64,000 nucleotides of DNA, from IMG/VR virus record IMGVR_UViG_3300035145_003993, positions 62,001-126,000 of that record; one strand, written 5' to 3'. A model generated the notes under the pieces. It ran no database searches, was not told where the DNA came from, and saw only the letters and a list, made by a program, of their open reading frames with translations. This document shows, one piece after another, positions 22,884 through 38,186 of this stretch. The position numbers were made by a program, and so were the translations under genes. The first letter of the stretch is position 1; each line of letters opens with the position of its first letter.

Positions 22884-23237
22884 TTAACCGTCAAATTCAT
22901 CATCGTCAGGAAAAGGATTCCCTTCAGTATCAAGTCCTATATTAAAGAGCATGTTTTCATTATATCTATTAAGAAAATCATTGATTTCTTCATTTGAAAT
23001 ATTTCTTCCCGTCAATTGTCTTCCAAATCTTCTTAAAAATTCTCGATTGTTATTTGCTCTTTCTTCATCTGATCGTTTAATATCTTCAATTTGGCTTTCA
23101 ACGTCTGAAAGAGCTAAACTTGTTGGATCTTGTCCATCATCTGGTAGAGGTGCAAAAATATCATCATCATCATTATAATTGTTTTCTGCAATAACTTTTC
23201 TTATAATACTTCTTAACTTACTCTCTGTTATTTTCAT
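22884..23237 (-). CDS. Hypothetical protein with MKITESKLRSIIRKVIAE leader
   Basis: SD AGGAG; leader shared with 24883-25380 and 25490-25951. Confidence 0.65.
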   Translation of the reverse strand: MKITESKLRSIIRKVIAENNYNDDDDIFAPLPDDGQDPTSLALSDVESQIEDIKRSDEERANNNREFLRRFGRQLTGRNISNEEINDFLNRYNENMLFNIGLDTEGNPFPDDDEFDG

Positions 23238-23371
23238 ATAAACTCCTATTAAGTCTTATTTTATATATTATTATTTATATATATTATTGTTTAAATAAAT
23301 ATCATATAAATTATGAATATAGATTAAGGTCATCCAGAAAATAGACACCTTATTCGAGAAATAATTTACTT

Positions 23372-23917
23372 TTATACTTCAATAAAGTCAATAAACGACG
23401 ATTCACGTAATTTTTTCAATACAATCAACTCGCCAACTTTATAATAACACTTAGATAAAGAACTATCAATATCTCCTGAAAGTTGATGATACTCAATATC
23501 AGGCCTCATCATATACTTATCCCACACACTTTTAGCATCATCAGACACTTTACCACGATCACTCATCAAACAAACACCCTCCTCCGACGCCTTTTCAATC
23601 AATATTTCATAAAGTAAAGGCCCAAAACCTTTAGTCACAGGAAAAGTCTCAAATATAAAAAAGTTTCCTGATGATCTTTCACTCAATTCTCTTTCAAAAT
23701 CAATCGCTCCACTCACCACATCATCCTTAACATCATACTCAACTCGACCATAGTCTCCATCCAGATCGTATACAATCTTAACCTTACTCCCGTTTCGAGA
23801 TATTTCTTCAAGATTGTTAACAATCCTTAATATACTCTCTACACTCGCTACTTCAAAGCTCTCACTTAAAGAAACACGCCATCCTTCAACTAACTCTCGA
23901 TACTCTTTTCGATTCAT
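23372..23917 (-). CDS. GNAT-like acetyltransferase-fold protein with leader
   Basis: KGFGPLLYEILIE...LMSDRGKVSDDAKSVWDKY fits GNAT motif A plus S-x-x-A-x-x-W; coding strand is very C-poor. Confidence 0.6.
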   Translation of the reverse strand: MNRKEYRELVEGWRVSLSESFEVASVESILRIVNNLEEISRNGSKVKIVYDLDGDYGRVEYDVKDDVVSGAIDFERELSERSSGNFFIFETFPVTKGFGPLLYEILIEKASEEGVCLMSDRGKVSDDAKSVWDKYMMRPDIEYHQLSGDIDSSLSKCYYKVGELIVLKKLRESSFIDFIEV

Positions 23918-23957
23918 AAGTTAAATCCTGTTTGATTTTTTTACTCTGTCTATATAT

Positions 23958-23999
23958 TTAAAAAATAAAATTTTGAATATAATTTTCTAATAACTTCAT
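23958..23999 (-). CDS. 13-aa mini-ORF MKLLENYIQNFIF (leader-like remnant)
   Basis: AAAGGA SD upstream; resembles KILLESYILN of the adjacent gene. Confidence 0.3.
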   Translation of the reverse strand: MKLLENYIQNFIF

Positions 24000-24040
24000 A
24001 TAAAATTCCTTTAATTATATAGTAAATATTTATTAAAATT

Positions 24041-24886
24041 CTAAGTTAAACTATTTAAACAAACAACGTTGTTTTGAAAAAGACCAATTATTTTTTTCCA
24101 CACTTCTAAAGAATCACTGTGAAAATTTTGATAAAATTCATTAAAATCTTCATAATCTTCCATTTTATCTCTAAATATATTTTCATCAACTTGATTAATA
24201 TGTCTGTTTATAATAGTAAAAGCTCCTAAACTTGGAATAAAATCCATACCACCAACGCCTTCAGTAAAACCATAATGTTTTAAAAATATCAAAGCATCGT
24301 TCTGATATATTGTTGACAGTTCACGATATCCATTTACATCTTTTAACATTGAATACTTATTTATAATATCTTTAGTAGATCTTGACATTTTATAATCTTT
24401 ATAATCATACCACCCTACGAAATCGACAATTCTATGCCAAATATCATGTACCATCCAATCTAAATTATCTTGAACTAAATTAACTTTCCCTTTATCAAGG
24501 AAATTTCCAACATTAATACAGATAAATACGGGTAATTCATCTTCAAATTCTCCACCAACACTGTCAATATCTTTCTTAGGAATAAATGACTTAATATGAT
24601 CAATTATGTTTTCATTCTTTTCGAAAATATAACATTGTTTGTGTATAAATTCAAATTGTTCATCACTCAAATATACTCTTTTTGAACCATCATATTGATC
24701 AAACATATTCGAAAATAATTTCTGATCACAGTTTATACCTATTAGCCACGCATTAAGATCAAAATTTTCTTGAGAAACTTTTTCTTTCGATAGATTTTTG
24801 TTTAACTGAAATTTGCTAAAACGTCCTTTTTCAAGTAAAAGGTTTAAAATATAACTTTCTAACAATATTTTTTCTTTTTTATTCAT
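24041..24886 (-). CDS. Hypothetical protein with LLESYILNLLLE leader
   Basis: 281 aa; contains WMVHDIWH (HD-like, possibly metal-binding). Confidence 0.6.
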   Translation of the reverse strand: MNKKEKILLESYILNLLLEKGRFSKFQLNKNLSKEKVSQENFDLNAWLIGINCDQKLFSNMFDQYDGSKRVYLSDEQFEFIHKQCYIFEKNENIIDHIKSFIPKKDIDSVGGEFEDELPVFICINVGNFLDKGKVNLVQDNLDWMVHDIWHRIVDFVGWYDYKDYKMSRSTKDIINKYSMLKDVNGYRELSTIYQNDALIFLKHYGFTEGVGGMDFIPSLGAFTIINRHINQVDENIFRDKMEDYEDFNEFYQNFHSDSLEVWKKIIGLFQNNVVCLNSLT

Positions 24887-25380
24887 TTGTCAATTCTATT
24901 TCCAAATTTATTATATTTGTTACCAAAAAAAGCTTTTCTAAATGAATCAATTTTTTTCTTATTTTCAAGATCAATTATTTTTTTTGAACTTTCTCTTGCA
25001 TCATATAACGATTTTGTTTTTAAATCAAAACCTTCAAGATAACTTATTGCGTCATTCACACATTCTTTAAATTCTATAGGATTCTCACTTTTTGTATGTT
25101 CTTCATATAGAAAATTTATAAATTTATGAAAATGTCCAGGGTCATTATAAACTTCTTTTGTCAAATTACTTAGGTCTTCACCATTAATTTTTACAAAGAC
25201 ACCAGTGTTAGGTGACATATTAATATTAAAGTATTGATCATCTTTTATAGGAAAGTTATTTTTTAATTCTCTTTCCATTTCTTCGAAAAATTTTTCTTTT
25301 GTATTATATTTTGTTATAGAACTAGATTCTTTAATTATTTGTCTTATAAGACTTCTTAATTTGTTCTCTGTTATTCTCAC
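24883..25380 (-). CDS. Hypothetical protein with MRITENKLRSLIRQIIKE leader
   Basis: GTG start with AGGAG SD. Confidence 0.65.
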   Translation of the reverse strand: MRITENKLRSLIRQIIKESSSITKYNTKEKFFEEMERELKNNFPIKDDQYFNINMSPNTGVFVKINGEDLSNLTKEVYNDPGHFHKFINFLYEEHTKSENPIEFKECVNDAISYLEGFDLKTKSLYDARESSKKIIDLENKKKIDSFRKAFFGNKYNKFGNRIDK

Positions 25381-25489
25381 GTTAACTCCTAAATAACTTT
25401 ATTTATAAATCTATATATTATCTTATATTATAAATTAAAGTCTATTCGTGATAAACGTAAGACAATCTTTTTACTTAATACTGAATTTT

Positions 25490-25951
25490 TTAACTCATTA
25501 ATTTTTTAAACTCAACTAAAACTTCTTTAATGTTTTCACTCATTTTTACAATGTCATATAAAAATATATTATTATGATCAATTTCAACTCTTACTACAGC
25601 ATAATAATCAGGTTCTGGGAATTTAAGTTGATATGGTTCTGCTTTCACCAATAAATATCCACACTCGCCCATATTATCTCGACTCCAAATTGCATTATGT
25701 CTAACAAATTCATTTGTAAACAAAGCAGCCGTATATGCATCATGTCCTAAATCCAATCCTAAATCCAATCGATCAGAAATCTTGTGTCCAATAGTAACTA
25801 ATTCGTCTCTAAGCGTATCTTCATCTAATTTCTTTACAAACAAATCAGTAAAAATTTCTTTTTCATCACGATCATGTAGGTTTTCTTCACCATATGACTC
25901 TTTAATTACTTGACGAATAATATTTCTTAATCTACTCTCTGTTATTTTCAT
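25490..25951 (-). CDS. Hypothetical protein with MKITESRLRNIIRQVIKE leader
   Basis: AGGAG SD; last minus-strand gene before the divergence point. Confidence 0.65.
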   Translation of the reverse strand: MKITESRLRNIIRQVIKESYGEENLHDRDEKEIFTDLFVKKLDEDTLRDELVTIGHKISDRLDLGLDLGHDAYTAALFTNEFVRHNAIWSRDNMGECGYLLVKAEPYQLKFPEPDYYAVVRVEIDHNNIFLYDIVKMSENIKEVLVEFKKLMS

Positions 25952-26040
25952 TTTTTTCTCCTAATGAAATCTTATAACTTATAATATATATCTTTTATAA
26001 TATAAAAAAAATTTAATTTATATAAACGTTGTGACTCAAG

Positions 26041-26460
26041 AGCCACTCCTTCTACATCAAAACTCAAACAAAACAGTCATAACACACTTCAAACATTCTT
26101 AAAACTTCAAATATATACACTTTTAAAAATTTCATATAAACCTCTTCAATTCTTATTTAAAATTTGGATCCAAATTTATCTCTGTTAAATCTTTTAATCC
26201 ACTTCAATTAAAACACACATCAACTCAATCAAGTCTTTACTCACACAATTCTCAAATCAAATCACACATACCTCACACCTCCTTCAGCAAACTCAAAAAC
26301 TTTTCAAAATTTTTCTCCGGAAATTTTTCCCGAAAAACCACTTTTTACTTTTTACACTTCGCCACATTTTTTGCCCACATACACACACATATAACACGTC
26401 TTATCTAATACACACTTCTCTCACATTTACACTTTCTCACACTTTCTTTTATATGTGGTA
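26041..26460. other. Non-coding G-depleted (CA/CT-rich) tract
   Basis: 16 G in 420 nt on the + strand (manual count); no ORF >=60 aa. Confidence 0.8.
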
Positions 26461-26543
26461 CAAGGTATTCACTTATACTACATCTCTCGAGTAAAAAATT
26501 TTCTCGGAAAAAAATTGGCTAGTCGGTTAGCGCTTTTTTCGCG

Positions 26544-26638
26544 GTTACACTTCAGAGAGTTAACGCTGGGGCCTCCCCCAGGGGGGCCTCAGAAGCGCCC
26601 AGTTACACCCCGGGGCATAGAGGGGCATCAAGTGTAAC
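26544..26638. repeat. GC-rich palindrome flanked by GTGTAAC boxes in both orientations
   Basis: GGCCTCCCCCAGGGGGGCC hairpin at 26570-26588; GTTACAC at 26544 and 26602; GTGTAAC at 26632. Confidence 0.75.
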
Positions 26639-26689
26639 TCGAGCGATTGAAATACACAAGCTTTCGAGGCATGACCAAATTGATCGGTC

Positions 26690-27005
26690 AAGTGTAACTC
26701 ATCCCTGAAAATGGTATAATAAACCATAAGGGGGGAACAGGAACAACGGATTCCTAAAGGTTAAAATAAAAAAAACCTCAAGCCTTAAAAAACTTTTTGA
26801 AAACTAGGAATAAAAACTTCAGGCATTAATAAGTGTAACCCTATAATAATAGGTTTATAATAAACCATAAGGAACAACGGTTCCAATAAGGACAAATTAA
26901 AAAAATCCTTCAAGTTTAAAAAACTCTTTGAAAATTAGGAAATAAAAACCCAGCATTAATAAGTGTAACTTTTAAATATATAATTTATTATAAACCATAA
27001 GGTAT
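26690..27005 (+). repeat. Tandem about 130-140-bp imperfect repeat, each unit carrying a promoter
   Basis: GTGTAA at 26692, 26833 and 26963. Shared AACAACGG(A)TTCC, TTAAAAAACTyTTTGAAAAyTAGGAA and GCATTAATAAGTGTAAC segments. Confidence 0.9.
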
Positions 27006-27067
27006 AAAGGCCTTATTAAATAATCTTTAACTTACCTACAACCCTATTATAAAAGGATTAAATTAAA

Positions 27068-27679
27068 ATGGAAAACTCAACACTAATGCAACAATTGTTT
27101 CAAGATTACATTCAAAACGGTGGTCAACCTAAAATTACCAGTTTCCGTTTGCATCTTGAAAAGCTAATGAAAACAGAAATCAAGCCCCTTTGCGGAGGTT
27201 CAAGAAGACTTGCCCCAGGAGCTCATGATTGGAGAAACGAATTAAAAGATCGATTTGGAGGTCGAGGTAATAAATGGATGAAAGTTTCCATTGAGGAAAT
27301 TAATCCATCTCTCGATAAATTTGATGCTGAAGGTTATGATACAGAAGATTACCGATCTCATATCGAACGAGCCGGTTTCGCTTGGATTCGATATTATGGA
27401 CCAAAGCTTAATAATGGAATTAAGGTCGCGGCATTTACTGTTCATACATTTGATGCAACAATTTATCAGCCTCAAACTCAGCACTATATACCGGTTGATC
27501 GTTTGGATGAAACAATTGAACCATTAAATGGAACTCCATTCAGCCTAAAGCTTGAAGAAGCTGGATCGATCGTTCAAAATGATACTGATGATGAAGTTAC
27601 TCCTTTAGATGAGGAATCCGCGAACTTAAACGATGAAATCCTAAGTCAAATCCAAGATTTGGAACTAGAGGACCTCTAA
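27068..27679 (+). CDS. Early protein, paralogous family A (copy 1)
   Basis: FRLHLEK..KPLCG..WR..L..RF.GRG.KW..AWIRYYGP..LNGTPFSLKLE, acidic tail; AAAGGA SD. Confidence 0.85.
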   Translation: MENSTLMQQLFQDYIQNGGQPKITSFRLHLEKLMKTEIKPLCGGSRRLAPGAHDWRNELKDRFGGRGNKWMKVSIEEINPSLDKFDAEGYDTEDYRSHIERAGFAWIRYYGPKLNNGIKVAAFTVHTFDATIYQPQTQHYIPVDRLDETIEPLNGTPFSLKLEEAGSIVQNDTDDEVTPLDEESANLNDEILSQIQDLELEDL

Positions 27680-27935
27680 GATCACCGGGATAATATAAAC
27701 TCCCATGATGCCCGTATCGTTTGATTGAAGTCATAAATAAATCTGAACTGATAGTTTGGATGGTCAAACGATAAAACTTTACTTTGATTATTTGCTTATA
27801 ATATAAGTGTAATGATAAATGAATCGTTCAACATTTAAAATGATTGTTCGATCGATTAAGAACTTTTAGTGTAATTGATCGTTTGATTAATTATAATTTA
27901 TAATCTCAACTCATTCATTTAAGGAATCGTCGTTA

Positions 27936-28190
27936 ATGGAAGAATACTCAACCCCTCTATGTCTTATTACATCGTTCTTTTTGTCAATCTTCGCTTACAC
28001 TTCGTCTCAGTCAAACGAATTACCTATCCAGCATTTAGAGTTCGATGAAATGATCATTGAACCGAGTGAATCGATGAAACGATCAATACAGATAATCGAA
28101 TTCGACGATCATGTCATCGTTTCTAGGTCAATCGCTTTAGCTGACAAAAACGAAGATGACGATGAAGACGACGAAGATTATGGATGCTAA
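27936..28190 (+). CDS. Small secreted/membrane protein with acidic tail
   Basis: Hydrophobic N-terminus, repeated IQ..EFD motif; downstream of promoter 27869. Confidence 0.6.
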   Translation: MEEYSTPLCLITSFFLSIFAYTSSQSNELPIQHLEFDEMIIEPSESMKRSIQIIEFDDHVIVSRSIALADKNEDDDEDDEDYGC

Positions 28191-28336
28191 TATCTAGTCA
28201 ATCGTTATAAAAGTAATGCTTCAAGATTCAAACGACCAGCTTCATCACATTTTCTCTCAAGTGTAACTCATCGTTTTATGAAGTATAATATATCATAAGG
28301 TCCAACAAATTAATCAACCACCCAAAAGGATTTAAT

Positions 28337-28498
28337 ATGTACAAAGTAATTAATCAAGAACTAGAAAAGTTTGTTAAATCATTTAAAACTCGTCAAGAGG
28401 CTGAAGTTTATATCGCTCGACAAGGGAACAAGACTTACGAACTACTTGATCGTCAATACCCAGTTTATATCATCGCATCTTCATCACCTTCTAAATAA
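28337..28498 (+). CDS. 53-aa hypothetical early protein (not in the track)
   Basis: MYKVINQELEKFVKSFKTRQEAE...; AAAGGA SD after promoter 28261. Confidence 0.65.
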   Translation: MYKVINQELEKFVKSFKTRQEAEVYIARQGNKTYELLDRQYPVYIIASSSPSK

Positions 28499-28508
28499 GG
28501 ATAATGTC

Positions 28509-28766
28509 ATGGATTTTAATCAAGATACACTCAATGATCGTTTATATAAAGAACATCCAGAACTCAGCTCGAATTGGTCGTTTATGGATTGGGACGATGA
28601 CAAAGCAACGATAACATATCAATTCGATGATGGATCTGATGATGAGGTCTTCATTTATAAAGACGGATCGATTCATATTTCAGAAAAAACGATATACGAA
28701 ATGAATAAGATCTTAATGAATCAAGTTACATATCGATATTTCAATCATTCTGTATCATATCACTAG
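28509..28766 (+). CDS. Hypothetical early protein (start MDFNQD)
   Basis: AAGGA SD at 28497; C-terminal part of track ORF 28371-28766. Confidence 0.6.
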   Translation: MDFNQDTLNDRLYKEHPELSSNWSFMDWDDDKATITYQFDDGSDDEVFIYKDGSIHISEKTIYEMNKILMNQVTYRYFNHSVSYH

Positions 28767-28984
28767 TCTGGCTCATATCTTAAGTGTCTAGGTGTTACAG
28801 CATCCTCGATCGTCGGCTCTAGGTTAGGTGGTATATCCATCTATCCTTCTTAGAAAAGACTCGAAGCCAGATCAAGCTTCAAACGATGAAGTTATTTAAT
28901 CAAGTGTAACTCTCATTCGTATAGAGTATAATAAACCATAAGGCCGGCCTAATCAATCATCTATTCATCCAAAGGATTAACATC

Positions 28985-29251
28985 ATGAAAAAAATTACAA
29001 AAGATCAATTCTACAGACTAATCATGTCCTGTAACCCAGAACTTCATAAACTTCCTCAACACATCCAAGATGACATCTCCGATCTACGTAAAGTCACTAA
29101 GAATGGCAAAGCTCATCTACTTCTTACTCATCCAGAAGGCCAAGATAATTACTTCCTTGATTACGTCGAAGTAGATATGCTATGTGAAGAAGAAATTGAT
29201 GAAACTAGACTACATGCTAAAGAAAATAGAGGACGTCTTGTCGCCATTTAA
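28985..29251 (+). CDS. Hypothetical early protein
   Basis: Promoter 28904, AAAGGA SD. Confidence 0.7.
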   Translation: MKKITKDQFYRLIMSCNPELHKLPQHIQDDISDLRKVTKNGKAHLLLTHPEGQDNYFLDYVEVDMLCEEEIDETRLHAKENRGRLVAI

Positions 29252-29442
29252 TAAGTTTAATTAAACTTAAGATCCTACAAGTTACTAGTATATCTTATAT
29301 CTACTTTAATATTACCTTTTGAGTACTTCAAGATTCAAACGGCCAGTTTCATCACATAAGTGTAACTCTTAAATCCGAATGGTATAATATATCATAAGGT
29401 CCAATAAATCAATCAACCAATTAATCTACAAAGGATTTAAAT

Positions 29443-29637
29443 ATGAAAGTTCGAAAAAGAGCATCTCAAACAAATAATATCTCAGTTTGGGCAGAAGCTA
29501 ATAAAAAAGGTGGTTTCATTATTTACATGGGGATCAAAGGAACAGACGCTAAATCGATCGTTGGGGCCGCGGCATACAAAGAAACTCTCGAATATAATTT
29601 AAGAAAAGCTAAGTTCAAGCACGGAATCAAACTTTAA
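29443..29637 (+). CDS. Hypothetical early protein (basic)
   Basis: Promoter 29360, AAAGGA SD. Confidence 0.7.
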   Translation: MKVRKRASQTNNISVWAEANKKGGFIIYMGIKGTDAKSIVGAAAYKETLEYNLRKAKFKHGIKL

Positions 29638-29815
29638 GATAACAGATCGTTCGGTATACTTCTAACTTTAACCTCATCTTTAAAATGTCTAGATAAAACA
29701 TCGCTCGGCTTCATCACAAATTTCTCTTAAGTGTAACTCTTAAATCTGAATGGTATAATATATCATAAGGTCCAATTAATCAAACAAACCAATCAAATCA
29801 AAAAGGATTTAAAAC

Positions 29816-30454
29816 ATGAATAACTCAAACCTACAAACCTCTGAACAGGAGAACAGCATGTCTACAATTCAAAAACTTTTCCAAGAATATCTCGAATCAG
29901 GCGGTCAACCAAAACTTACAAGCTTCAGATTTCATATCGAAAAACTAATGAAGACCGATATAAAACCTTTATGCGGTCGATCTGGAAAGTCTTCATCAGG
30001 TAATGATTGGAGAAAAGATCTTATGAATCGATTTAAAGGTCGCGGATCAAAATGGGTCTTTGTAAGTCTCGAAGAAATTAAAGATACTCTCGATCGTTTT
30101 GACCAAGAAGGAATTGATACAGAAGATTACAGATCTTGGACTGAAAAGAAACAAAAAGCTTGGATTAGATTTTATGGTCCAAGGCTCGATAATGGAATCA
30201 AAGTCGCGGCATTTACAGTTCATACCCTAGATTCAACAATCTATCAGCCTCATACATTACATTATATTCCAATCGATCGTCTAGATGAAACAATTACTCC
30301 ATTAAACGGGACTCCCTTCAGTCTCAAGCTTGAAGTTGATGATGTCCAACAGGAAAATGATACTGAATCAAACGAAGAAATTATCGAATATATCTCTAAA
30401 TTTGATGAAGATCTCTTACAAGGACTCGAAGATTTACAGAACGATGATCTATAA
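29816..30454 (+). CDS. Early protein, paralogous family A (copy 2)
   Basis: Co-linear with 27068-27679, with long identical stretches (GIKVAAFTVHT, PLNGTPFSLKLE). Confidence 0.88.
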   Translation: MNNSNLQTSEQENSMSTIQKLFQEYLESGGQPKLTSFRFHIEKLMKTDIKPLCGRSGKSSSGNDWRKDLMNRFKGRGSKWVFVSLEEIKDTLDRFDQEGIDTEDYRSWTEKKQKAWIRFYGPRLDNGIKVAAFTVHTLDSTIYQPHTLHYIPIDRLDETITPLNGTPFSLKLEVDDVQQENDTESNEEIIEYISKFDEDLLQGLEDLQNDDL

Positions 30455-30660
30455 ATCTAATTAAATCTTAATCCAGATCTTAGAAATCATTCCTCGTTAG
30501 ATGCTTCAATACTACAAGTAATCGCTGCATCACACTCAAGATGTATATTTTGTCGATTGATGAAATATACAAGACAAACATACGATTAAATCAGTTTATA
30601 ACTTTTTTGAATTGTTATATGAACAATCATATTTCTCATAAAGTAAAGTCTGGAGCCAAA

Positions 30661-30825
30661 ATGGATATTGTATCGTTATCATTTCTTACTAAATCTATTG
30701 TACCAGTGTGTCTAATGATGATTCCTATCATGACAATTTCTGGAACAGGGCCCGTAAGGTCTCTAATGACGGGTCTATCGATCTACTTTGGATTTATTAT
30801 CCTTAACTCTTTACACGTAATTTAA
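30661..30825 (+). CDS. Small membrane protein (likely start 30661)
   Basis: GGAG SD before MDIVSL; two hydrophobic segments. Confidence 0.4.
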   Translation: MDIVSLSFLTKSIVPVCLMMIPIMTISGTGPVRSLMTGLSIYFGFIILNSLHVI

Positions 30826-30871
30826 ACTAAACGATCTACACTACAACATTATAATATTACAAGGAAAAAAC

Positions 30872-31102
30872 ATGTCTGAGACACCTTTAAAGTTTATTAA
30901 ATGCGCTACGATGAATTCTGGATCACCTGTCACTATTTCTTTTCAATCAGTTTCGCATGTCGTTAAAAACAAGTCTGCGCACGATGAAAATAGAAGTACA
31001 ACTTGGATAAACTTCCATTCAGGTAAATCAATTCATGTAGACACTCCGTACGAAAAAGCTGAGTTATTATTTACTAGATTTTTAAATGAGACTTCAATTT
31101 AA
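30872..31102 (+). CDS. Small protein, family B (FlbD-like pattern)
   Basis: VSH..NK..HD..TWINFHSGKSIHV; paralogue of 31820-32047. Confidence 0.7.
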   Translation: MSETPLKFIKCATMNSGSPVTISFQSVSHVVKNKSAHDENRSTTWINFHSGKSIHVDTPYEKAELLFTRFLNETSI

Positions 31103-31251
31103 TTAACTTATCTAAATCAATCTGTGAAAGTGCCTTGCCCAGTTTATAACTCGCATCATCAAAAATGAAAGTGTAACTATTATTTATTTTGAGTATAATA
31201 TATCATAATCCAATTCAAATCAACCACTAACTAAAATAAAAAAGGATTAAA

Positions 31252-31416
31252 ATGAGTTCCAAACAAAAACAACAATTCCTAGATTCAATTAATGAACTTG
31301 TAAAACGATCAAACGAAGAGTATAAGAAAGGAAATATAAAAGAAGCCAAGCGTTTATCAAGGGACGCAAATCAATTAAACCTTCACTTTAAATCTATGCT
31401 TAATGAAATGATCTAA
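31252..31416 (+). CDS. 54-aa helical hypothetical protein
   Basis: Promoter 31171, AAAGGA SD; MSSKQKQQFLDS... Confidence 0.6.
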   Translation: MSSKQKQQFLDSINELVKRSNEEYKKGNIKEAKRLSRDANQLNLHFKSMLNEMI

Positions 31417-31544
31417 TGACAAAACCCAATAAGAAATTAAAAGAATTAAACCACGAGATTCAATCTGAAAGAAGATTGAAAGGTTTAACTGGTAGGCTTG
31501 AAGATTTAATTAGACAAAGAAATCTTCTTCTTGCAAAGAAATAG
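31416..31544 (+). CDS. 42-aa basic peptide
   Basis: TAATG coupling with the upstream ORF. Confidence 0.45.
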   Translation: MTKPNKKLKELNHEIQSERRLKGLTGRLEDLIRQRNLLLAKK

Positions 31545-31662
31545 ATTTTATATTAATGAAAGTTTTAAAATATTATTTTTGTGTAATTAATTAAAACCAT
31601 TGTTATAATATACCATAATCCAATTCAAATCAAACAACCACCAAAAAAAAGGATTTAAAATT

Positions 31663-31815
31663 ATGCCTCTATTATTATTATCTGCACTTATTATTTACGG
31701 ATTAATTTCTTTTGCAGTTGGTTTAATAATACTACATCCTGTTCCAACATTGTTCGCAACAGCTTTATTCATTACTTTTAACTTTATCAATACTTTAATC
31801 CTTAGAAAGGTCTAA
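31663..31815 (+). CDS. 50-aa membrane peptide
   Basis: Promoter 31581, AAAGGA SD; entirely hydrophobic. Confidence 0.55.
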   Translation: MPLLLLSALIIYGLISFAVGLIILHPVPTLFATALFITFNFINTLILRKV

Positions 31816-31819
31816 TCTT

Positions 31820-32047
31820 ATGACAACAACAGCACTCAGAACTTACACAACAGTTAATTCATCATCAGAAATCACAGTCGCTCTAAATTCAGTATCTCAT
31901 ATTATTGAAAATAAAAACCCTCATGATGATACTTCATTAGATCAAAGAACATCGTGGATTCATTTCCATTCAGGAAAGTCAGTTCATGTAAGTGAATCAT
32001 TCGAAAACGTCAATGATGACTTAGTAGAGTTTTATAAAACTCGCTAA
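31820..32047 (+). CDS. Small protein, family B (copy 2)
   Basis: VSHII.NK.PHD..TSWIHFHSGKSVHV. Confidence 0.7.
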   Translation: MTTTALRTYTTVNSSSEITVALNSVSHIIENKNPHDDTSLDQRTSWIHFHSGKSVHVSESFENVNDDLVEFYKTR

Positions 32048-32059
32048 CAAGGAATATTA

Positions 32060-32239
32060 ATGGTAAGAAAATTATTTGATGCTTCTCTCTTTTTTATAAT
32101 GTTTGCTTTAGCTTTTTTAGCTTTTATTAATCTTCTAGAGCAATATCCAACCTTTACGTATTCTGTAATTGCTATTTTTACTCTTGCAGAAGCTTATGAT
32201 CGATCTCTTCCAAAATACAAACAATACTTGAAACGTTAA
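32060..32239 (+). CDS. 59-aa membrane peptide
   Basis: AAGGA SD; two TM-like segments. Confidence 0.5.
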   Translation: MVRKLFDASLFFIMFALAFLAFINLLEQYPTFTYSVIAIFTLAEAYDRSLPKYKQYLKR

Positions 32240-32247
32240 GGAATAAA

Positions 32248-32538
32248 ATGACTGTATCTAATAGAATTAAAATCGAATGGGAATTTGATATATCAGTAAA
32301 TGAAGAATTACAAAATCGTCTAAACTTATCTGAAGGGCAGATATATGAAATGCTTGAAGACGAAGACGAAGAATCAAGACTACATAGTTTATGTTGTGGA
32401 GAAACAGGAACTCCAGAATGGATAGATCTAGATCTTTTCTTTGAAGACCCTCGAAGTATAAGTGAAGATGAAATTACAGAAACTTTATCTGATGATTATG
32501 GTTGGCTGATTAAATCATGGGAATGGCAATATGTGTAA
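32248..32538 (+). CDS. Acidic hypothetical protein
   Basis: IKIEWEFD...LSDDYGWLI; the stop codon lies in the next promoter's -35 box. Confidence 0.7.
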   Translation: MTVSNRIKIEWEFDISVNEELQNRLNLSEGQIYEMLEDEDEESRLHSLCCGETGTPEWIDLDLFFEDPRSISEDEITETLSDDYGWLIKSWEWQYV

Positions 32539-32656
32539 CCTTAATTAATTTAGCGTATAATGTCTCATAAGGGGAATTTAGAATGAAACTTATTTTTATG
32601 TTACTACTACTTTATATTATCTTCCATGCCAACACACCAAGAAAAAGGAAATAACA

Positions 32657-32896
32657 ATGAATATAATTAAATACTTGAAAGAATTCTTCTACGCATTTTC
32701 AGCAGGTTGCGTTTTATTTTCTTTTGTATCACTCATCATTTTAATTATCCTCGCTCCATTTGGATTATGTATTTATCTCGGAGATACTTTAGGATATCAC
32801 AGCGTAATTTCATTTAGTTCTGCTATTATGTGTTATGCAATATACTGGATAATCATCAGACACTTTAACTTAATTGATATCAAAGGTTTACAATGA
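32657..32896 (+). CDS. Membrane protein
   Basis: Two TM segments; AAAGGA SD. Confidence 0.6.
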   Translation: MNIIKYLKEFFYAFSAGCVLFSFVSLIILIILAPFGLCIYLGDTLGYHSVISFSSAIMCYAIYWIIIRHFNLIDIKGLQ

Positions 32897-33168
32897 ATGA
32901 TAATGAAAAGATCTCTTTTACAACAGGAGCTAATGGAGAAATCCTTGTATGGGAAACTCCAAAGGGTGAAGCAGCAAAAATTGAACGCAATCTTGCGGAA
33001 AGAATTGATTATTACGTCGCATTTCAGCCTCTCAAAGAAAACAATCTCGTCTTCATTCCCAAAAGAAAAACTGTTGAATCAATTATACAAGCTTGGGATC
33101 AATTCCAATCTCACTTAGCTATTCAATCTGATTCTTATATTTTATTCAACCCAAATGAAGATGTATAA
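32893..33168 (+). CDS. Hypothetical protein
   Basis: ATGA overlap with the upstream gene. Confidence 0.6.
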   Translation: MNDNEKISFTTGANGEILVWETPKGEAAKIERNLAERIDYYVAFQPLKENNLVFIPKRKTVESIIQAWDQFQSHLAIQSDSYILFNPNEDV

Positions 33169-33177
33169 TACTCTTAA

Positions 33178-33297
33178 CTACTTTTCCGTAGATCTTGTCG
33201 CTGTTTTTTATATCTTGAATAATGCTTGATATTTCAACACTTAGTATCATCACAAAAGTGTAACTTTAATTTTTTTTGAGTATAATACACCATAAGG
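33178..33297 (+). repeat. About 120-bp promoter-cassette direct repeat, copy 1 (copy 2 at 34310-34427)
   Basis: Shared CTACTyTTCCGTAGATCTTrTCGCTGTTTTTT...ATCACAA(AA)GTGTAACTTTAATTTTTTTTGAGTATAATA.A.CATAAGG. Confidence 0.9.
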
Positions 33298-33348
33298 CAA
33301 TTACCTTTAAAATTAATTACTCCCCCACCAAAAAAAGGAAAATACAGC

Positions 33349-33750
33349 ATGATTACTGATTATATTATTGCTTCAGTTATGATTAACAATGTTCCCCCAT
33401 CAGCTTATGAACAAGGCTTCGATGATTTTTTACAGGATATGGATGATCCAGTTCTTTTCTCACACTTTGTAAATAAATACAATGTTACTGAAGGCATAAT
33501 AATTAAAACTCATGAAAATAATTCCGGTTATAATGTACCCTGTATTACAGCCTATGTTGATTATAATACTTGGAATACTTGGTCTGAGGATATGAAAGAA
33601 TTTTGGAATATGATGTTCCACCCCGAAATTCAGAAAAAAGAAAAAAATGAATGGGGAATTGATTGTATACTACCAAAGCTATCAGATGAAGAAATTGATA
33701 ACATCATTATTCCGCTAGAAAAACTCAAATCAAGATTTCCTAATGTGTAA
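33349..33750 (+). CDS. Hypothetical early protein
   Basis: Promoter 33258; ends in GTG TAA, the next -35 box. Confidence 0.7.
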   Translation: MITDYIIASVMINNVPPSAYEQGFDDFLQDMDDPVLFSHFVNKYNVTEGIIIKTHENNSGYNVPCITAYVDYNTWNTWSEDMKEFWNMMFHPEIQKKEKNEWGIDCILPKLSDEEIDNIIIPLEKLKSRFPNV

Positions 33751-33822
33751 TTTAAATTAACCCTGTTTTATAATAAATCATAATCCAATAAAAACCATCA
33801 TTTAATTCAAAAGGATAAAAAC

Positions 33823-34227
33823 ATGGAAAACAAAATCAATCTATCAAATGAAATCCGCTATGTTGTTGATTATAGATCTTGTCCAAGTGGCTTAGGCTCA
33901 ATCTTCTTAGATGAAGTTGGAGGGAATAAACAGATCCTCATTACTGATCAAGATACTGGTCCTAAGGATATGTCTGAAGCTAAAGAAACATTCAATCCGG
34001 ACTCGATGCCTGATTTCGTTGATCACATCCCGCTTGACTCCCAGTTCTGGGATATCATTAACCAATGCCTCGGAGCTATCCTCGTATCACATCATGTTAA
34101 ATACGTTATCGATTCAGAACTAGCTTATGATTGTCCAGATCTTACTGATCCCGATGGTGGTGATAATAAAACAATCTTTACAATTCAAAATTGGCTAAAA
34201 GCTCGTGATATCAAAGGTATTTTATAA
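33823..34227 (+). CDS. Hypothetical early protein (family shared with the C-terminus of 40714-41337)
   Basis: ILITD..PDFVDHIPLD..Q.L..IL. Confidence 0.7.
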   Translation: MENKINLSNEIRYVVDYRSCPSGLGSIFLDEVGGNKQILITDQDTGPKDMSEAKETFNPDSMPDFVDHIPLDSQFWDIINQCLGAILVSHHVKYVIDSELAYDCPDLTDPDGGDNKTIFTIQNWLKARDIKGIL

Positions 34228-34309
34228 ATTAGATTCGAATATGTAAAAAACATACTTCAGGTATATTACCCTATCTAATCGTAATAATCACTAAAACAGA
34301 CGATTTTAT

Positions 34310-34427
34310 CTACTCTTCCGTAGATCTTATCGCTGTTTTTTTGTATCTAAAAAATGCTCAGTATTATATCACACTGTTTCATCACAAGTGTAACTTTAAT
34401 TTTTTTTGAGTATAATATATCATAAGG
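34310..34427 (+). repeat. About 120-bp promoter-cassette direct repeat, copy 2
   Basis: See 33178-33297. Confidence 0.9.
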
Positions 34428-34464
34428 TAATTCAATCAACCATTCAATCAAAAAGGAAACAAAC

Positions 34465-34755
34465 ATGACTTCAATAAGAACAACTCAAATCGGTGATACT
34501 CTCGAAATCAAAAAGATTACACAAATATCTGGTCATCATAAAGATTATCTGTTCTTAACTAATCATTCAGATAATCCTAATTGTCCATATCCAAAAACAA
34601 CAAACATCTCTCGTATAGTTCACCCGGGAACAAAGGTTGCAGTTATCGCTAAAGGCAGACCACAAGATAAATACAACGAAAGCTTTATTACTGTAGTTCA
34701 TAATAATTTAATTTTCGATATTCGTTCATCAGATCTAAGAAGATTCTGTAAGTAA
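34465..34755 (+). CDS. Hypothetical early protein (SH3/KOW-like)
   Basis: IGDTLEIK..GTKVAVI; promoter 34388. Confidence 0.65.
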   Translation: MTSIRTTQIGDTLEIKKITQISGHHKDYLFLTNHSDNPNCPYPKTTNISRIVHPGTKVAVIAKGRPQDKYNESFITVVHNNLIFDIRSSDLRRFCK

Positions 34756-34826
34756 CTCTTAAGGTGTGTAACTCTGCTCTCTCTCCTATTATAATATATT
34801 ATACCAACAATACAAAGGATTCTACA

Positions 34827-35195
34827 ATGAATAATCAAATCTCCCTCCAACAATGGAATGAACTCATGTCTCTCGTCAAAACAAGCGCTGCAACTGAAAA
34901 ACAAATCAAAGGTGCTATCTACTCCGGAACAGATGAACTTAAGAACGGCAACCAACGACACTACTGCTACGATAACCTCGATCGGTATGATGTCCCCGGT
35001 CTAGATCTTACAATCAAAAAAGATTCAGACGTTGGAACTCTCACAGTCTACAACGGCTCAGAACAAGCAAGAGCTCCTATTACATTTGAACAAGGCCTCT
35101 TCATCGCTACTAACTTCTTCAAATACGAAGGATACGATATGTCAGAACAAATCGTTTGTGATTGGGTTATGGATGGCAATAAGAGTGTCTTTTAA
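34827..35195 (+). CDS. Hypothetical early protein (start MNNQIS)
   Basis: AAAGGA SD after promoter 34766. Confidence 0.65.
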   Translation: MNNQISLQQWNELMSLVKTSAATEKQIKGAIYSGTDELKNGNQRHYCYDNLDRYDVPGLDLTIKKDSDVGTLTVYNGSEQARAPITFEQGLFIATNFFKYEGYDMSEQIVCDWVMDGNKSVF

Positions 35196-35209
35196 GAAAT
35201 TAAACAAAA

Positions 35210-35359
35210 ATGAATTTCGAAAAAGAAAAGCAAGCATTAAGAACCCTATACGCTTCTAAGAAGCAATGGTTTCAGTCGACTCCGACATACGGATGTTGGA
35301 TTTATCCGGACATTTATTACATTAAATTAAAAGATCTAGAGAATAAATACTCTAATTGA
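35210..35359 (+). CDS. 49-aa hypothetical peptide
   Basis: MNFEKEKQALRTLYASKKQW...; weak SD. Confidence 0.35.
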   Translation: MNFEKEKQALRTLYASKKQWFQSTPTYGCWIYPDIYYIKLKDLENKYSN

Positions 35360-35567
35360 TAATGATTGTCAAAATCAGTACGAGTCTCGAGCTAAGAGTC
35401 GAGTTCTTTGGCAGTTTATTAAAAAAGAATTATCTGTTTAGCTCTGTTAATGATTTTAAATTAAGTTAATAGGTTTTATCGTATAAGTAAAAAAGATTAA
35501 AACAGGTGTATTTAAGTCCATTTGAGACTATAATAAATATATAATGTTTTATAGAGGAAAAGAGAAG

Positions 35568-35828
35568 ATGAAAAGATTGTTATTTTTGGTGTTGATTTTG
35601 TTTAGTGTGTGTTGTAGTGAAGAGGCATTGGGAGAAGACGAGTTGAGGGTTGAGTGTAAGAGACCGGGAGGAAGGGTGGAGGTATATCGAGTGAAGATAA
35701 AGAGTTTGTTTGATTTGACTCGGTCGAGGAGTGCCTTTTGGCATTTTGTGGGTGTGAGGAAGAGTGATGGAAAGAGAGTGGAGGTTGTATCGAACGAGTG
35801 TTATGTAGAGAGGGAGTTGAAGAGATGA
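35568..35828 (+). CDS. Putative lipoprotein in a C-depleted tract
   Basis: MKRLLFLVLILFSVCC signal/lipobox. Confidence 0.6.
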   Translation: MKRLLFLVLILFSVCCSEEALGEDELRVECKRPGGRVEVYRVKIKSLFDLTRSRSAFWHFVGVRKSDGKRVEVVSNECYVERELKR

Positions 35829-36151
35829 GTGTTATATTGGAGATAAGGGATTTAGAAAGAGGAAGACGTTTATTTAAGATGCAGCATGAAAGTGTTGATT
35901 GTAGTTTTGTTGAGTGGAAGAGGGAAGAGACTTTAGCAAGGGAGTTGGGATATGAAGATTCATTAGAAGAGATTCATAGTGATTGGGAGCTTGATGCAGG
36001 AATGATGATATCGATGTTGAAGAGATATAGGGATAGGGGAGTTGAGAGAGTAGATTGGAAGTGTAAAGGTGAGGGATTATCTATTGGAGAGATTATAGAG
36101 GATTTAACGTATGAGTTAGAATGTAGTTGGGATTCTTGGATTGATGATTAA
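35825..36151 (+). CDS. Hypothetical acidic protein in a C-depleted tract
   Basis: ATGA overlap; G-ending codons dominate. Confidence 0.55.
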   Translation: MSVILEIRDLERGRRLFKMQHESVDCSFVEWKREETLARELGYEDSLEEIHSDWELDAGMMISMLKRYRDRGVERVDWKCKGEGLSIGEIIEDLTYELECSWDSWIDD

Positions 36152-36361
36152 AGAGATGTTTGGATATTCTATTGTATAAGAGATATATTATGTGTAGAGT
36201 TAGATTTTTACAATAGAGGTTATAAAAAGATTTTTTATTATAGTCTGAATAGATTAGAGATTTAATTTTGTGTTATATGATTTGAGTGTAATTAAAATAA
36301 AAAGTGATTATAATGAATTATAAGGTTTAATAAACAGCCCAACCAAAAAAGGAAGCTTAAA

Positions 36362-37024: not shown

Positions 37025-37033
37025 AGGATAAAG

Positions 37034-37884: not shown

Positions 37885-37909
37885 GTAATCATTTAAAAGG
37901 ATATAAAAA

Positions 37910-38176: not shown

Positions 38177-38186
38177 GAAAATAATA

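What the first reader, a model, noticed from the sequence alone, without database searches (positions are those of the whole stretch)
25952..26690. Divergence junction: G-free tract, A-tract palindromes and a GC-rich hairpin ringed by inverted GTGTAAC boxes (candidate genome terminus/packaging or origin site)
Seen: about 740 nt with no credible ORF and 16 G in 420 nt (26041-26460). Two TTTTCTC(C)GGAAA A-tract motifs lie at 26307-26337 and 26493-26516. The most GC-rich patch of the window is the hairpin at 26570-26588. The promoter -35 word appears without a -10 in both orientations (26544, 26602 reverse; 26632 forward). Gene orientation diverges here. Inference: a terminase cut site or start of a terminal repeat, or an origin. 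The GTGTAAC word may be a protein-binding site in its own right.
Basis: partly seen in the sequence, partly recalled or inferred. Interest (0 to 1): 0.65.

Follow-up and report, generated by a model that had tools for sequence, protein, structure and literature searches.

The report
Early-promoter control region of jumbo phage

Summary
26041-26460 has 16 G in 420 nt; the G-poorest 420-nt window of the 211-kb contig (14 G) starts at 26034. 26517-26690 is the contig's GC-richest patch. The contig's only two G6 runs and its only CCCCGGGG lie here or just beside it.

GTGTAAC is the -35-type box of the phage's own promoter family, AAGTGTAAC-N16-TATAAT-N4-CATAAGG. There are 11 strong copies, all rightward, between 26.69 and 34.4 kb. 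The first three (P1-P3) are tandem and have no ORF. A leftward promoter-like site lies at 25986.

The phage has a T4-type (gp17-like) terminase. A 100%-complete relative assembles as a circle with the homologous site internal. Contigs of about a dozen relatives start at scattered positions in the tract. I found no support for a terminus, but no raw reads were available to test it directly.

The spacer is conserved in three lineages as well as, or better than, the neighbouring gene. The complete relative repeats the same genome-wide extremes. The inverted boxes co-vary with P1's own -35 box.

Best reading: a cis-acting DNA module controlling the first early promoter, possibly also an origin. 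The biochemical role is inferred, not shown.

The parts
25970..25986 (-). Leftward promoter-like site. On the minus strand it reads TATTAT-aagt-TATAAGA. It lies 19-35 nt upstream of the start codon (25951) of the first leftward gene.
   Evidence: It is the only minus-strand match to TAnnAT-N4-YATAAG near here. An RNA-library contig of a ~95% relative covers 25366-25970 and stops there.
25966..26025 (.). Very AT-rich, easily melted segment.
   Evidence: It is the fifth least stable 60-nt duplex of the contig by nearest-neighbour free energy, at the 99.97th percentile.
26041..26460 (+). G-depleted tract made of C, A and T words (CACAC, CTCAC, ACACTT). The left part (to about 26280) varies between strains.
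   Evidence: 16 G in 420 nt, within the genome-wide minimum. There are 6 ACACTT in 26001-26500 against 0.19 per 500 nt genome-wide. G stays at 2.6-5.1% in relatives. The X2 contig is unlike the window left of 26094.
26281..26347 (+). Most conserved non-coding block. It begins CCTTCAGCAAACTCAAAAAC and contains the first motif TTTTTCTCCGGAAATTTTT (26310-26328).
   Evidence: 78-90% identity between lineages whose neighbouring protein is about 60-65% identical. It is single-copy in the contig. Contigs L003 and L004 both begin at its first base.
26376..26393 (.). Alternating pyrimidine-purine run (CACATACACACACATATA). Its sequence and length vary in relatives.
   Evidence: Read from the sequence. 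CA/TA runs occupy the same place in L002, L003, L010 and L012.
26451..26483 (+). Conserved block ending in the invariant GTATnCAnnTATACTACAT.
   Evidence: Invariant columns in nine sequences from three lineages. TATACTACAT is unique in the contig.
26493..26516 (+). Second A-tract motif, AAAAAATTTTCTCGGAAAAAAATT. It is a direct repeat of the first motif, 188 nt downstream.
   Evidence: It is conserved as TTnTCTCCGGAAAAA in relatives, at a spacing of 202 nt in two L002-lineage contigs (by the motif coordinates) and roughly 176 nt in L003 (my reading of the sequence).
26517..26690 (+). GC-rich island with a cluster of G4-G6 runs on the + strand.
   Evidence: It holds the GC-richest windows and the most stable duplex of the contig. 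Five of the 38 +strand G>=4 runs start within 200 nt from 26568; the fifth is the G6 at 26730, just beyond this island. The G-runs are invariant across lineages.
26544..26558 (-). Inverted copy 1 of the promoter -35 box plus its upstream flank (minus strand TCTCTGAAGTGTAAC). No -10 follows.
   Evidence: 14 of 15 identical to the reverse complement of promoters at 28253-28267 and 29723-29737. No -10.
26566..26592 (.). GC hairpin or palindrome, CTGGGGCCTCCCCCAGGGGGGCCTCAG.
   Evidence: 12-bp stem, -10 kcal/mol as ssDNA, z -1.5. It contains one of the contig's two G6 runs.
26602..26638 (.). Inverted pair GTTACAC (26602-26608) and GTGTAAC (26632-26638) flanking the unique CCCCGGGG (26608-26615). 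Neither box has a -10.
   Evidence: In relatives the pair reads ATATACAC and GTGTATAT, so both arms changed together.
26690..26754 (+). Promoter P1. AAGTGTAAC 26690-26698, TATAAT 26715-26720, CATAAGG 26725-26731, G6 26730-26735, conserved hairpin GGAACAACGGATTCC 26740-26754.
   Evidence: PWM score 50.8 bits. An RNA-library contig of a relative begins exactly at 26740, directly abutting a sequencing adapter. The hairpin has z -3.7.
26831..27002 (+). Promoters P2 (box 26831-26839, -10 26856-26861) and P3 (box 26961-26969, -10 TATTAT 26986-26991). With P1 they form a 131-nt tandem unit without an ORF.
   Evidence: Tandem repeat 26739-27002, period 131, 82% matches.
27068..27679 (+). First early gene (203 aa, no known family). 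A paralogue lies at 29816-30454.
   Evidence: No Pfam or PHROG hit. The AF2 model has pLDDT 69, with only weak SH3/Tudor-like similarities of Z <= 4.9.

Best explanation
The stretch is the non-transcribed divergent control region at the head of the early gene block of an uncultured marine phage of the T4 superfamily. The contig is 211 kb and about 84% complete.

Shown. GTGTAAC is the -35-type element of a phage-specific promoter family, AAGTGTAAC-N16-TATAAT-N4-CATAAGG. This equals hexamers GTGTAA and TATAAT with a 17-nt spacer. Eleven near-identical copies, all rightward, precede small unknown genes from 26.69 to 34.4 kb. Weaker GTGTAA(T/A) versions serve the other early and middle genes. The first three copies (P1-P3) are tandem, 131-141 nt apart, and ORF-less. 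A single leftward promoter-like site lies at 25986. The roughly 700 nt between them carry conserved DNA blocks: two direct TTCTCCGGAAA motifs in A/T tracts, an invariant TATACTACAT block, and a GC/G-run island. In that island, inverted copies of P1's own -35 box flank GC palindromes.

Inferred. These blocks act as DNA rather than as protein or RNA. They are probably binding sites that regulate or load RNA polymerase at P1. One model is an operator or looping arrangement in which a -35-box-binding factor, or RNA polymerase sigma region 4 itself, occupies the inverted boxes together with P1's -35. The G-free spacer keeps the same G-less, CA-rich make-up as the early mRNA leaders. The module may also double as a replication origin. 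It is not a fixed packaging end.
For: Promoter family.
- Word enrichment, 12 against 0.5 expected.
- Aligned sites.
- A PWM scan gives 11 strong sites, all + strand, at 26692-34388 and none on the minus strand.
- The -10/start motif occurs 17 times rightward between 26715 and 44977 and once leftward at 25986.
- GTGTAA-N16-TATAAT sites are absent from the structural-gene block and present in the other blocks.

Transcription. In an RNA library of a ~95% relative, contigs cover 25366-25970 and 26740-28292. The second begins directly after an adapter. No listed contig lies between 25971 and 26739.

Conservation. Three lineages keep the same order of blocks. 26268-26347 is 78-90% identical and 26454-26533 is 62-72% identical, against 45-85% for the first gene. 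The inverted boxes change together with P1's box (GTTACAC/GTGTAAC against ATATACAC/GTGTATAT), while later promoters in L003 keep AAGTGTAAC. The complete relative repeats the genome-wide extremes at the homologous site.

Not coding and not a known RNA.

Cassette behaviour typical of T4-type early regions. Relatives delete 28887-29349 or replace the gene between 28945 and 29318; both changes lie between the two promoter boxes at 28902 and 29358. Compare the PeSL elements of PMC2839356.
Against: - No experiment or raw-read data show promoter activity, protein binding, or the absence of transcription. Contigs cannot prove a gap, and the tool itself warns that a hole proves nothing.
- The factor that would bind the orphan boxes or the TTCTCCGGAAA motifs is unknown.
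- The co-variation of the inverted boxes rests on three lineages and could reflect local gene conversion.
- The extreme G-depletion over 420-600 nt is not explained by a simple operator model.
- The host, and so the polymerase specificity, is unresolved. The AdoHcyase gene is closest to Bacteroidota, yet Bacteroidota-type promoters are not enriched and Shine-Dalgarno use is strong.
Confidence: 0.5

Rival explanations
1. It is an origin of replication, alone or together with the promoter role. Repeated boxes and motifs would bind an initiator or architectural proteins. The very unstable AT segment or the alternating CA/TA run would melt. Transcription from the adjacent ORF-less promoters would activate or prime the origin, as in T4 oriF/oriG or the lactococcal phage c2 origin (both recalled from memory).
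For: - It is a single-copy, conserved, non-coding element at the only divergence point of the genome.
- It holds the fifth least stable 60-mer of the contig about 540 nt from the most stable patch.
- It has repeated oriented words and two direct motifs.
- P1 and P2 drive ORF-less 131-nt units with a conserved hairpin.
Against: - No initiator gene was recognised next to it.
- No leftward promoter would make the G-rich transcript needed for an R-loop across the G-poor tract.
- By established knowledge, T4-type origins are several, dispensable and poorly conserved, whereas this module is unique and conserved.
- Gene orientation is not symmetric about the site: 35 kb rightward against more than 176 kb leftward.
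- No coverage data were available.
Confidence: 0.22
2. It is the physical genome end or packaging site: a terminase cut site or the start of a long terminal repeat carrying the early genes, as in T5, SPO1, T7 or N4 (recalled from memory).
For: - The layout would fit a linear genome that enters early-genes first.
- The architecture resembles known pac sites (repeated boxes on both sides of a GC palindrome, with A-tracts); this resemblance is recalled from memory.
- Two contigs, L003 and L004, start at the same base of the most conserved block.
- Contigs to the right of the site are about twice as deep as left-flank contigs in two seawater runs (14.5-18.2 against 5.7-7.5, and 10-10.7 against 3.1-4.4).
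Against: - The terminase is gp17-like, 40% identical to a Flavobacterium phage relative and 33% to T4-like cyanophages.
- The complete relative closes as a circle with a 141-nt overlap, and the site is internal.
- Ten other contigs start at different positions across more than 800 nt.
- A 14-kb contig carrying the identical first-gene protein runs through the L003/L004 start point, with a leftward gene starting about 227 nt to its left. I could not tell whether L003 and L004 come from independent data.
- The depth difference is confounded. The dominant strain in X2 has a different left flank within the same contig, and the left-flank genes are a multi-copy family.
Confidence: 0.1
3. The GC-rich island is a gene for a small structured RNA, or the G-free tract is a long unstructured leader transcribed rightward.
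For: - GC islands in AT-rich genomes often mark RNA genes.
- The C(UCCG)G loop in both motifs would be a stable tetraloop on the + strand (read from the sequence).
- The tract has the same G-less, CA-rich make-up as the early 5' leaders.
- RNAalifold finds some compensatory pairs.
Against: - There is no Rfam match, even at E <= 10.
- The consensus fold is weak (-29.7 kcal/mol over about 300 columns). The compensatory pairs are essentially the inverted -35 boxes.
- Single-sequence folds are no better than shuffles.
- No promoter of the phage's type lies upstream.
- No listed RNA contig covers it, while both flanks are covered.
Confidence: 0.06
4. It is mainly a recombination boundary. Conserved promoter-like and GC stem-loop sequences would serve as crossover points between a strain-variable left flank and the early block, as with the PeSL cassettes of T4-type phages. 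There would be no dedicated regulatory role.
For: - The left flank differs between strains from 26094 or 26281 leftward.
- Many assemblies break inside the tract.
- Cassette deletion and replacement occur between downstream promoter boxes.
- PeSLs combine early promoters with G-run/C-run stem-loops.
Against: Block-wise conservation of about 460 nt with invariant motifs unrelated to promoters (TATACTACAT, TTCTCCGGAAA) exceeds what a crossover site needs.
Confidence: 0.12

Closest known systems
PeSL cassettes (promoter-early stem-loop) of the hyperplastic regions of T4-type phages (Arbiol et al. 2010, PMC2839356)
   Same: - Strong, near-identical sigma70-like promoters are repeated in front of small ORFan genes in one orientation.
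- A G-run/C-run stem-loop sits next to a promoter.
- Relatives differ by deletion or replacement of a gene lying between two cassettes.
   Different: - The -35 word is GTGTAA(C), and a conserved start region CATAAGG follows the -10.
- Only P1 carries the large GC island.
- The island sits in a 0.7-kb conserved, G-depleted, single-copy upstream module that PeSLs do not have.
Tandem early promoters A1-A3 at the left end of phage T7 (recalled from memory)
   Same: Three strong host-type promoters about 130 nt apart precede the first early gene, downstream of a repeat-rich non-coding region.
   Different: T7 has fixed ends with a short terminal repeat and a T7-type terminase. Here the terminase is T4-type and no end could be shown.
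pac sites of P1 and SPP1, and lambda cosB (recalled from memory)
   Same: Repeated short boxes on both sides of a central GC-rich or palindromic segment, with A-tracts.
   Different: - Those boxes bind a small terminase subunit and lie in or near the terminase genes. Here the boxes are copies of the promoter -35 element.
- The site is 75 kb from the terminase gene.
- The terminase family is the headful, pac-less type.
Transcription-coupled phage origins: T4 oriF/oriG and the lactococcal phage c2 ori between divergent early and late genes (recalled from memory)
   Same: A non-coding region at a divergence point, with promoters that make untranslated RNA and an easily melted segment nearby.
   Different: No origin activity, initiator or R-loop-prone transcript could be shown. 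The conservation and uniqueness are untypical of T4 origins.

Membership tests
Phage genome terminus or packaging (pac/cos/terminal-repeat) site | Read starts or ends pile up, or coverage steps two-fold, at the site in virion DNA | not testable with these tools
   All 24 runs found are kept as assembled contigs only, and the table of molecule ends was empty.
Phage genome terminus or packaging (pac/cos/terminal-repeat) site | A terminase of a family that makes fixed ends | tested here: not met
   TerL matches phrog_2 and gp17-like terminases. It is 40% identical to that of Flavobacterium phage immuto and about 33% to T4-like cyanophages. That the family is headful is established knowledge, not tested here.
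Phage genome terminus or packaging (pac/cos/terminal-repeat) site | Independent assemblies end at the same base, and complete relatives are linear with ends at the site | tested here: not met
   Contig starts of relatives scatter over more than 800 nt; only L003 and L004 coincide. The complete relative is a circular assembly with a 141-nt overlap, and the site lies at about 205.6-206.3 kb.
Sigma70-type early promoter cluster / PeSL-like cassettes of T4-type phages | A bipartite -35/-10 promoter with about 17-nt spacing, repeated before small genes | tested here: met
   GTGTAA-17-TATAAT. There are 11 strong and at least 7 weaker copies, all co-oriented with the genes.
Sigma70-type early promoter cluster / PeSL-like cassettes of T4-type phages | A stem-loop rich in G and C runs as part of each cassette | tested here: inconclusive
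   It is prominent only upstream of P1 (26566-26592, 26608-26615). The other cassettes carry only short GC palindromes or none that I saw.
Sigma70-type early promoter cluster / PeSL-like cassettes of T4-type phages | Gene gain or loss between relatives occurs between cassettes | tested here: met
   Contigs of X2 and X3 skip 28887-29349. The X16 contig replaces the stretch between 28945 and 29318. Both changes lie between the boxes at 28902 and 29358.
Sigma70-type early promoter cluster / PeSL-like cassettes of T4-type phages | Promoter activity | tested here: inconclusive
   An RNA-library contig starts at 26740, 20 nt after P1's -10, directly after an adapter. Contigs cannot prove a start.
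Replication origin (iterons plus an unwinding element) | Repeated binding sites next to an easily melted element | tested here: inconclusive
   Oriented repeated words and two direct motifs are present. 25966-26025 is the fifth least stable 60-mer of the contig. No initiator is known.
Replication origin (iterons plus an unwinding element) | Initiation of DNA synthesis at the site | not testable with these tools
   No raw reads or infection time series were available.
Structured non-coding RNA gene | A match to a known family, or a conserved fold with covariation, plus a transcript | tested here: not met
   No Rfam match at E <= 10. The consensus fold is weak, folds are no better than shuffles, and no RNA contig is listed over it.

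The most novel reading that the evidence does not exclude
The conserved module may be a previously undescribed kind of single-copy cis element in T4-superfamily giant phages. Its parts are a G-less spacer of 420-600 nt, two TTCTCCGGAAA motifs, and a G-run island with inverted -35 boxes. It could be a unique, sequence-defined replication origin, or a fixed packaging start with a long early-gene terminal repeat. Either would be unexpected for a phage with a gp17-type terminase.
Probability: 0.2. Interest if true: 0.7.

Novelty: new variant of a known kind. Interest (0 to 1): 0.45.

Why it matters
The work gives a concrete promoter grammar and the start point of the early programme for an uncultured lineage of marine giant phages. 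This lineage is detected in many seawater and wetland metagenomes.

It also singles out one conserved, compositionally extreme non-coding module that looks like the genome's master control point. If the module proves to be an origin or a packaging start, it would change the expectation that T4-type phages lack such unique sites. If it is a regulatory module, it offers a defined DNA target for finding the factor that switches early transcription on or off.

Tried and rejected
Searches for relatives of the region.
- blastn of the region against 50,697 phage records found no match.
- The exact promoter pattern was not found in IMG/VR.
- The invariant 19-mer pattern gave 49 IMG/VR loci, but only the known 239-kb relative was real.
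- The 32-nt pattern in metagenome contigs gave one real close relative (L075) and two chance bacterial hits.
- Searches with the flanking proteins in IMG/VR gave one weak locus and nothing.

Read evidence.
- Only contigs were available. The source run's own contig was not shown, and no ends table was produced.

RNA readings.
- Rfam at both gathering and permissive thresholds found only three tRNAs elsewhere.
- The RNAalifold result was weak.

Other sequence scans.
- The tandem-repeat and consensus promoter/terminator scans added nothing beyond the 131-nt unit. The standard TTGACA-type scan does not detect the phage's own promoters.
- A DnaA-box search found nothing in the region.
- Degenerate AAGTGT half-boxes on the minus strand of the G-poor tract were considered as weak leftward promoters. 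I rejected this because none has a -10. They may simply be part of the CA-rich words.
- The 18-bp perfect palindrome at 26160-26177 is not conserved in relatives.

Flanking proteins.
- The early and left-flank proteins have no Pfam or PHROG hits.
- The first early protein was folded and searched. Only weak SH3/Tudor-like similarities appeared (Foldseek E >= 0.2, Z <= 4.9), so no function can be assigned.

Polymerase and host.
- I looked for a virion or phage RNA polymerase that might use hairpin promoters. None was found among the large ORFs tested. The Pfam T7-type search was uninformative because its controls did not ring.
- Host assignment from the AdoHcyase gene points to Bacteroidota at 65-71% identity, but this conflicts with promoter and ribosome-binding-site usage. 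The host is left open.
Full report
WHAT THE WINDOW IS

The window is bases 62,001-126,000 of a single 211,364-nt viral contig. IMG/VR classes the contig as linear, and CheckV estimates it as 84% complete. GC content is about 28%.

It is a phage of the T4 superfamily:
- The large terminase is gp17-like, 40% identical to that of Flavobacterium phage immuto and about 33% to T4-like cyanophages.
- The major head protein is gp23-like, and a portal, a gp46-like SbcC nuclease and a GroEL are present.
- The stretch around the site is held, wholly or in part, by runs from wetland and many seawater metagenomes.
- No close relative exists among 50,697 deposited phage genomes.

My simple ORF map shows three gene blocks:
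- a leftward block from 0 to 88 kb, which holds the structural genes;
- a rightward block of about 80 small genes from 89 to 123.6 kb;
- a leftward block from 123.6 to 211 kb.

The finding therefore sits at the only major divergence point of the contig. The contig is not closed, since no ORF bridges its two ends.

THE OBSERVATION

Composition
- 26041-26460 has 16 G in 420 nt. The G-poorest 420-nt window of the contig (14 G) starts at 26034; the next lowest window elsewhere has 22, and the mean is 53.
- 26517-26690 contains the GC-richest 60-, 100- and 170-nt windows of the contig. It is also the most stable duplex.
- The contig's only two G6 runs are at 26581 and 26730. Its only CCCCGGGG is at 26608.
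- About 540 nt to the left of the GC island, 25966-26025 is the fifth least stable 60-mer of the contig.

Motifs and folds
- TTCTC(C)GGAAA occurs on this strand only at 26313 and 26501.
- The GC hairpin forms a 12-bp stem. Neither it nor the A-tract 'palindromes' fold better than shuffles of the same composition. It is the composition and the words that are exceptional, not the predicted structures.

Coding
- The two short ORFs, of 60 and 55 aa, are not preserved in relatives.

WHAT GTGTAAC IS

AAGTGTAAC occurs 12 times against 0.5 expected. Aligning the copies gives AAGTGTAAC-N16-TATAAT-N4-CATAAGG. This corresponds to hexamers GTGTAA and TATAAT with the canonical 17-nt spacer, often with a G before the -10.

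How the sites are distributed:
- A matrix built from these sites finds 11 strong copies (42-60 bits), all on the + strand, from 26692 to 34388.
- It finds seven weaker copies out to 59 kb and none on the minus strand.
- The TATAAT-N4-YATAAG core occurs 17 times rightward between 26715 and 44977, and once leftward at 25986.
- Looser GTGTAA(T/A)-N16-TATAAT sites precede genes in the rightward block and in the 123-211 kb block. One precedes the phage's own sigma-factor gene. None is found in the structural block.

Each early gene has its own cassette, followed by a G-free, CA-rich leader and an AAGGA ribosome-binding site. Relatives delete 28887-29349 or replace the gene between 28945 and 29318; both changes lie between the promoter boxes at 28902 and 29358. 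This is the behaviour described for the promoter-early stem-loop cassettes of T4-type phages (PMC2839356).

P1, P2 and P3 (26692, 26833, 26963) form a 131-nt tandem unit with no ORF. Each of the first two units opens with a conserved hairpin, GGAACAACGG(A)TTCC.

TRANSCRIPT HINTS

Only assembled contigs of the public runs could be laid on the region. In a metatranscriptome holding a ~95% relative:
- One contig covers 25366-25970.
- Another covers 26740-28292 and begins directly after a sequencing adapter, 20 nt after P1's -10.
- No listed contig covers 25971-26739.

This fits divergent transcription from 25986 and from P1 across a silent spacer. Contigs cannot prove starts or gaps, so I treat it as suggestive only.

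RELATIVES

The first early protein (203 aa) has homologues at 53-95% identity. Their contigs gave three lineages of the region:
- the window's own lineage (L013, L075);
- a second lineage (L002 and others), which includes a 239,550-nt contig;
- a third lineage (L003, L004, L005).

All three keep the same order of elements:
1. a G-poor tract;
2. the block CCTTCAGCAAAC...TTTTTCTCCGGAAATTTTT;
3. a second G-poor stretch ending in an alternating CA/TA run;
4. the invariant GTATnCAnnTATACTACAT;
5. a second TCTCCGGAAAAA motif;
6. the GC island with invariant G-runs and inverted -35 boxes;
7. P1 with TATAATAAACCATAAGG and the GGAAC hairpin.

Measures of conservation:
- Identity between lineages is 78-90% over 26268-26347 and 62-72% over 26454-26533. 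That equals or exceeds the first gene, at 45-85%.
- G stays at 2.6-5.1% in the tract in every lineage.
- The inverted boxes read GTTACAC/GTGTAAC in the window's lineage and ATATACAC/GTGTATAT in the other two. They match P1's own box, although later promoters in L003 keep AAGTGTAAC. This argues for a constraint on the inverted repeat itself, or for local gene conversion.
- In the complete relative the homologous site is again the G-poorest window, the GC-richest patch and the only G6 run. It is followed by rightward promoters of the same type.

IS IT A GENOME END?

I found no support for this, but I could not run the decisive test.

Against:
- The terminase family packages by the headful without fixed ends. 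This is established knowledge for gp17-type enzymes; the homology itself is shown.
- The complete relative is a circular assembly. Its ends overlap by exactly 141 nt, which is probably an assembler k-mer overlap, and the site is internal.
- About a dozen contigs of relatives begin inside the region but at scattered positions over more than 800 nt.
- A 14-kb contig runs through the point where L003 and L004 both start.

For:
- L003 and L004 start at the same base of the most conserved block. I could not establish that they are independent.
- Contigs to the right of the site are about twice as deep as left-flank contigs in two runs. This is confounded: the dominant strain there has a different left flank within the same contig, and the left-flank genes belong to a multi-copy family.

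The frequent contig breaks are better explained by strain variability of the left part of the tract and its microsatellite-like runs. A collapsed long terminal repeat cannot be excluded without raw reads. I give this reading about 0.1.

WHAT IT MOST LIKELY DOES

Shown: the region is the head of the early transcription block, bounded by a leftward promoter-like site and three tandem rightward promoters. It carries about 460 nt of conserved, single-copy, non-coding DNA.

Inferred: the conserved blocks act as DNA. The inverted copies of P1's -35 box, the two direct TTCTCCGGAAA motifs and the G-run island are most simply read as binding sites. They could hold RNA polymerase through sigma region 4, or a box-specific factor, next to P1. 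That would give loading or, by looping with P1's own -35, shut-off of the first early promoter.

An origin function, alone or in addition, is the main rival (about 0.22). The points for it are uniqueness, the position at the divergence point, an unwinding-prone segment and ORF-less promoter-driven units. The points against it are that no initiator and no R-loop-prone transcript could be found, and that the conservation is untypical of T4 origins.

A structured RNA gene is unlikely.

The extreme G-depletion remains unexplained by any of these readings. It mirrors the composition of the early mRNA leaders on the same strand.

COMPARISON AND NOVELTY

The promoter cluster is a new variant of a known kind: T4-type early-promoter cassettes and the hyperplastic region. 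It has its own -35 word and start motif. The conserved G-less upstream module with inverted -35 boxes has no counterpart that I could find in the libraries searched or in the literature searches I ran.

Noticed in passing
G000:C1:146881-147633 (-) = L156:1072-1824, outside the window: The phage encodes a 250-aa sigma70-family protein like RpoS/RpoD, with regions 1.2, 2 and 3 and the start of region 4. It ends inside the -35-reading helix, and its -10-reading region 2 looks canonical. It has its own GTGTAAT-N16-TATAAT promoter. The complete relative has one too.
   Followed up: partly
window 35544-36151: This is the C-poorest 420-nt window of the whole contig (13 C). It lies in two G-rich ORFs (94 and 117 aa; the first looks lipoprotein-like), about 9.3 kb right of the G-poorest tract. 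The complete relative has its C-poorest window at a similar distance, about 9 kb. I did not check homology of the genes.
   Followed up: partly
window 28887-29349 and 28945-29318: Relatives in two seawater runs lack this 461-nt stretch, which holds the 88-aa gene at 28985-29251. An RNA-library relative has 384 different letters between 28945 and 29318. Both changes lie between the promoter boxes at 28902 and 29358, which looks like cassette shuffling.
   Followed up: partly
window 22884-25951 (-): Three of the leftward genes begin with the same motif, M(K/R)ITE(S/N)(K/R)LR..IR..I.E. They are a paralogous family of unknown function next to the site. This flank differs between strains.
   Followed up: no
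window 27068-27679 and 29816-30454: The first early gene is duplicated, with 60% protein identity. It is conserved as the first gene in all relatives, has an acidic C-terminal tail, and matches no known family.
   Followed up: partly
window 28284-44977, 5' leaders after each CATAAGG: The leaders of the early genes are almost G-free and CA-rich (for example TCAATCAACCA) up to an AAGGA ribosome-binding site. AAGGA lies upstream of 98 of 264 genes, against 15 in the antisense control.
   Followed up: partly
contig 0-88 kb (structural block), upstream regions: ATAATTAT (TATAATTA) lies upstream of 10 of 75 genes against 0.8 expected, so it is a candidate late-promoter word. T4's TATAAATA is not enriched.
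   Followed up: no
window 51443-53906, 51932-53230, 9374-10714, 45037-46215: Three tRNA genes (Met, Thr, Lys) are present. There is an S-adenosylhomocysteine hydrolase gene whose closest bacterial relatives are mostly Bacteroidota (65-71%). There are also a PIN-PhoH fusion and a T4-type RNA ligase. Host clues conflict, because Bacteroidota-type promoters are not enriched.
   Followed up: partly
window 26160-26177: There is a perfect 18-bp palindrome, AAATTTGGATCCAAATTT, inside the G-poor tract. It is not conserved in close relatives.
   Followed up: yes
G001 (239,550-nt relative), contig ends: The break of this circular assembly lies only about 0.6 kb from the single convergence point of transcription, which carries a bidirectional terminator-like hairpin, AAAAAAACCAGCTTAAAGCTGGTTTTTTT. 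This may be chance or an assembly-graph effect.
   Followed up: no
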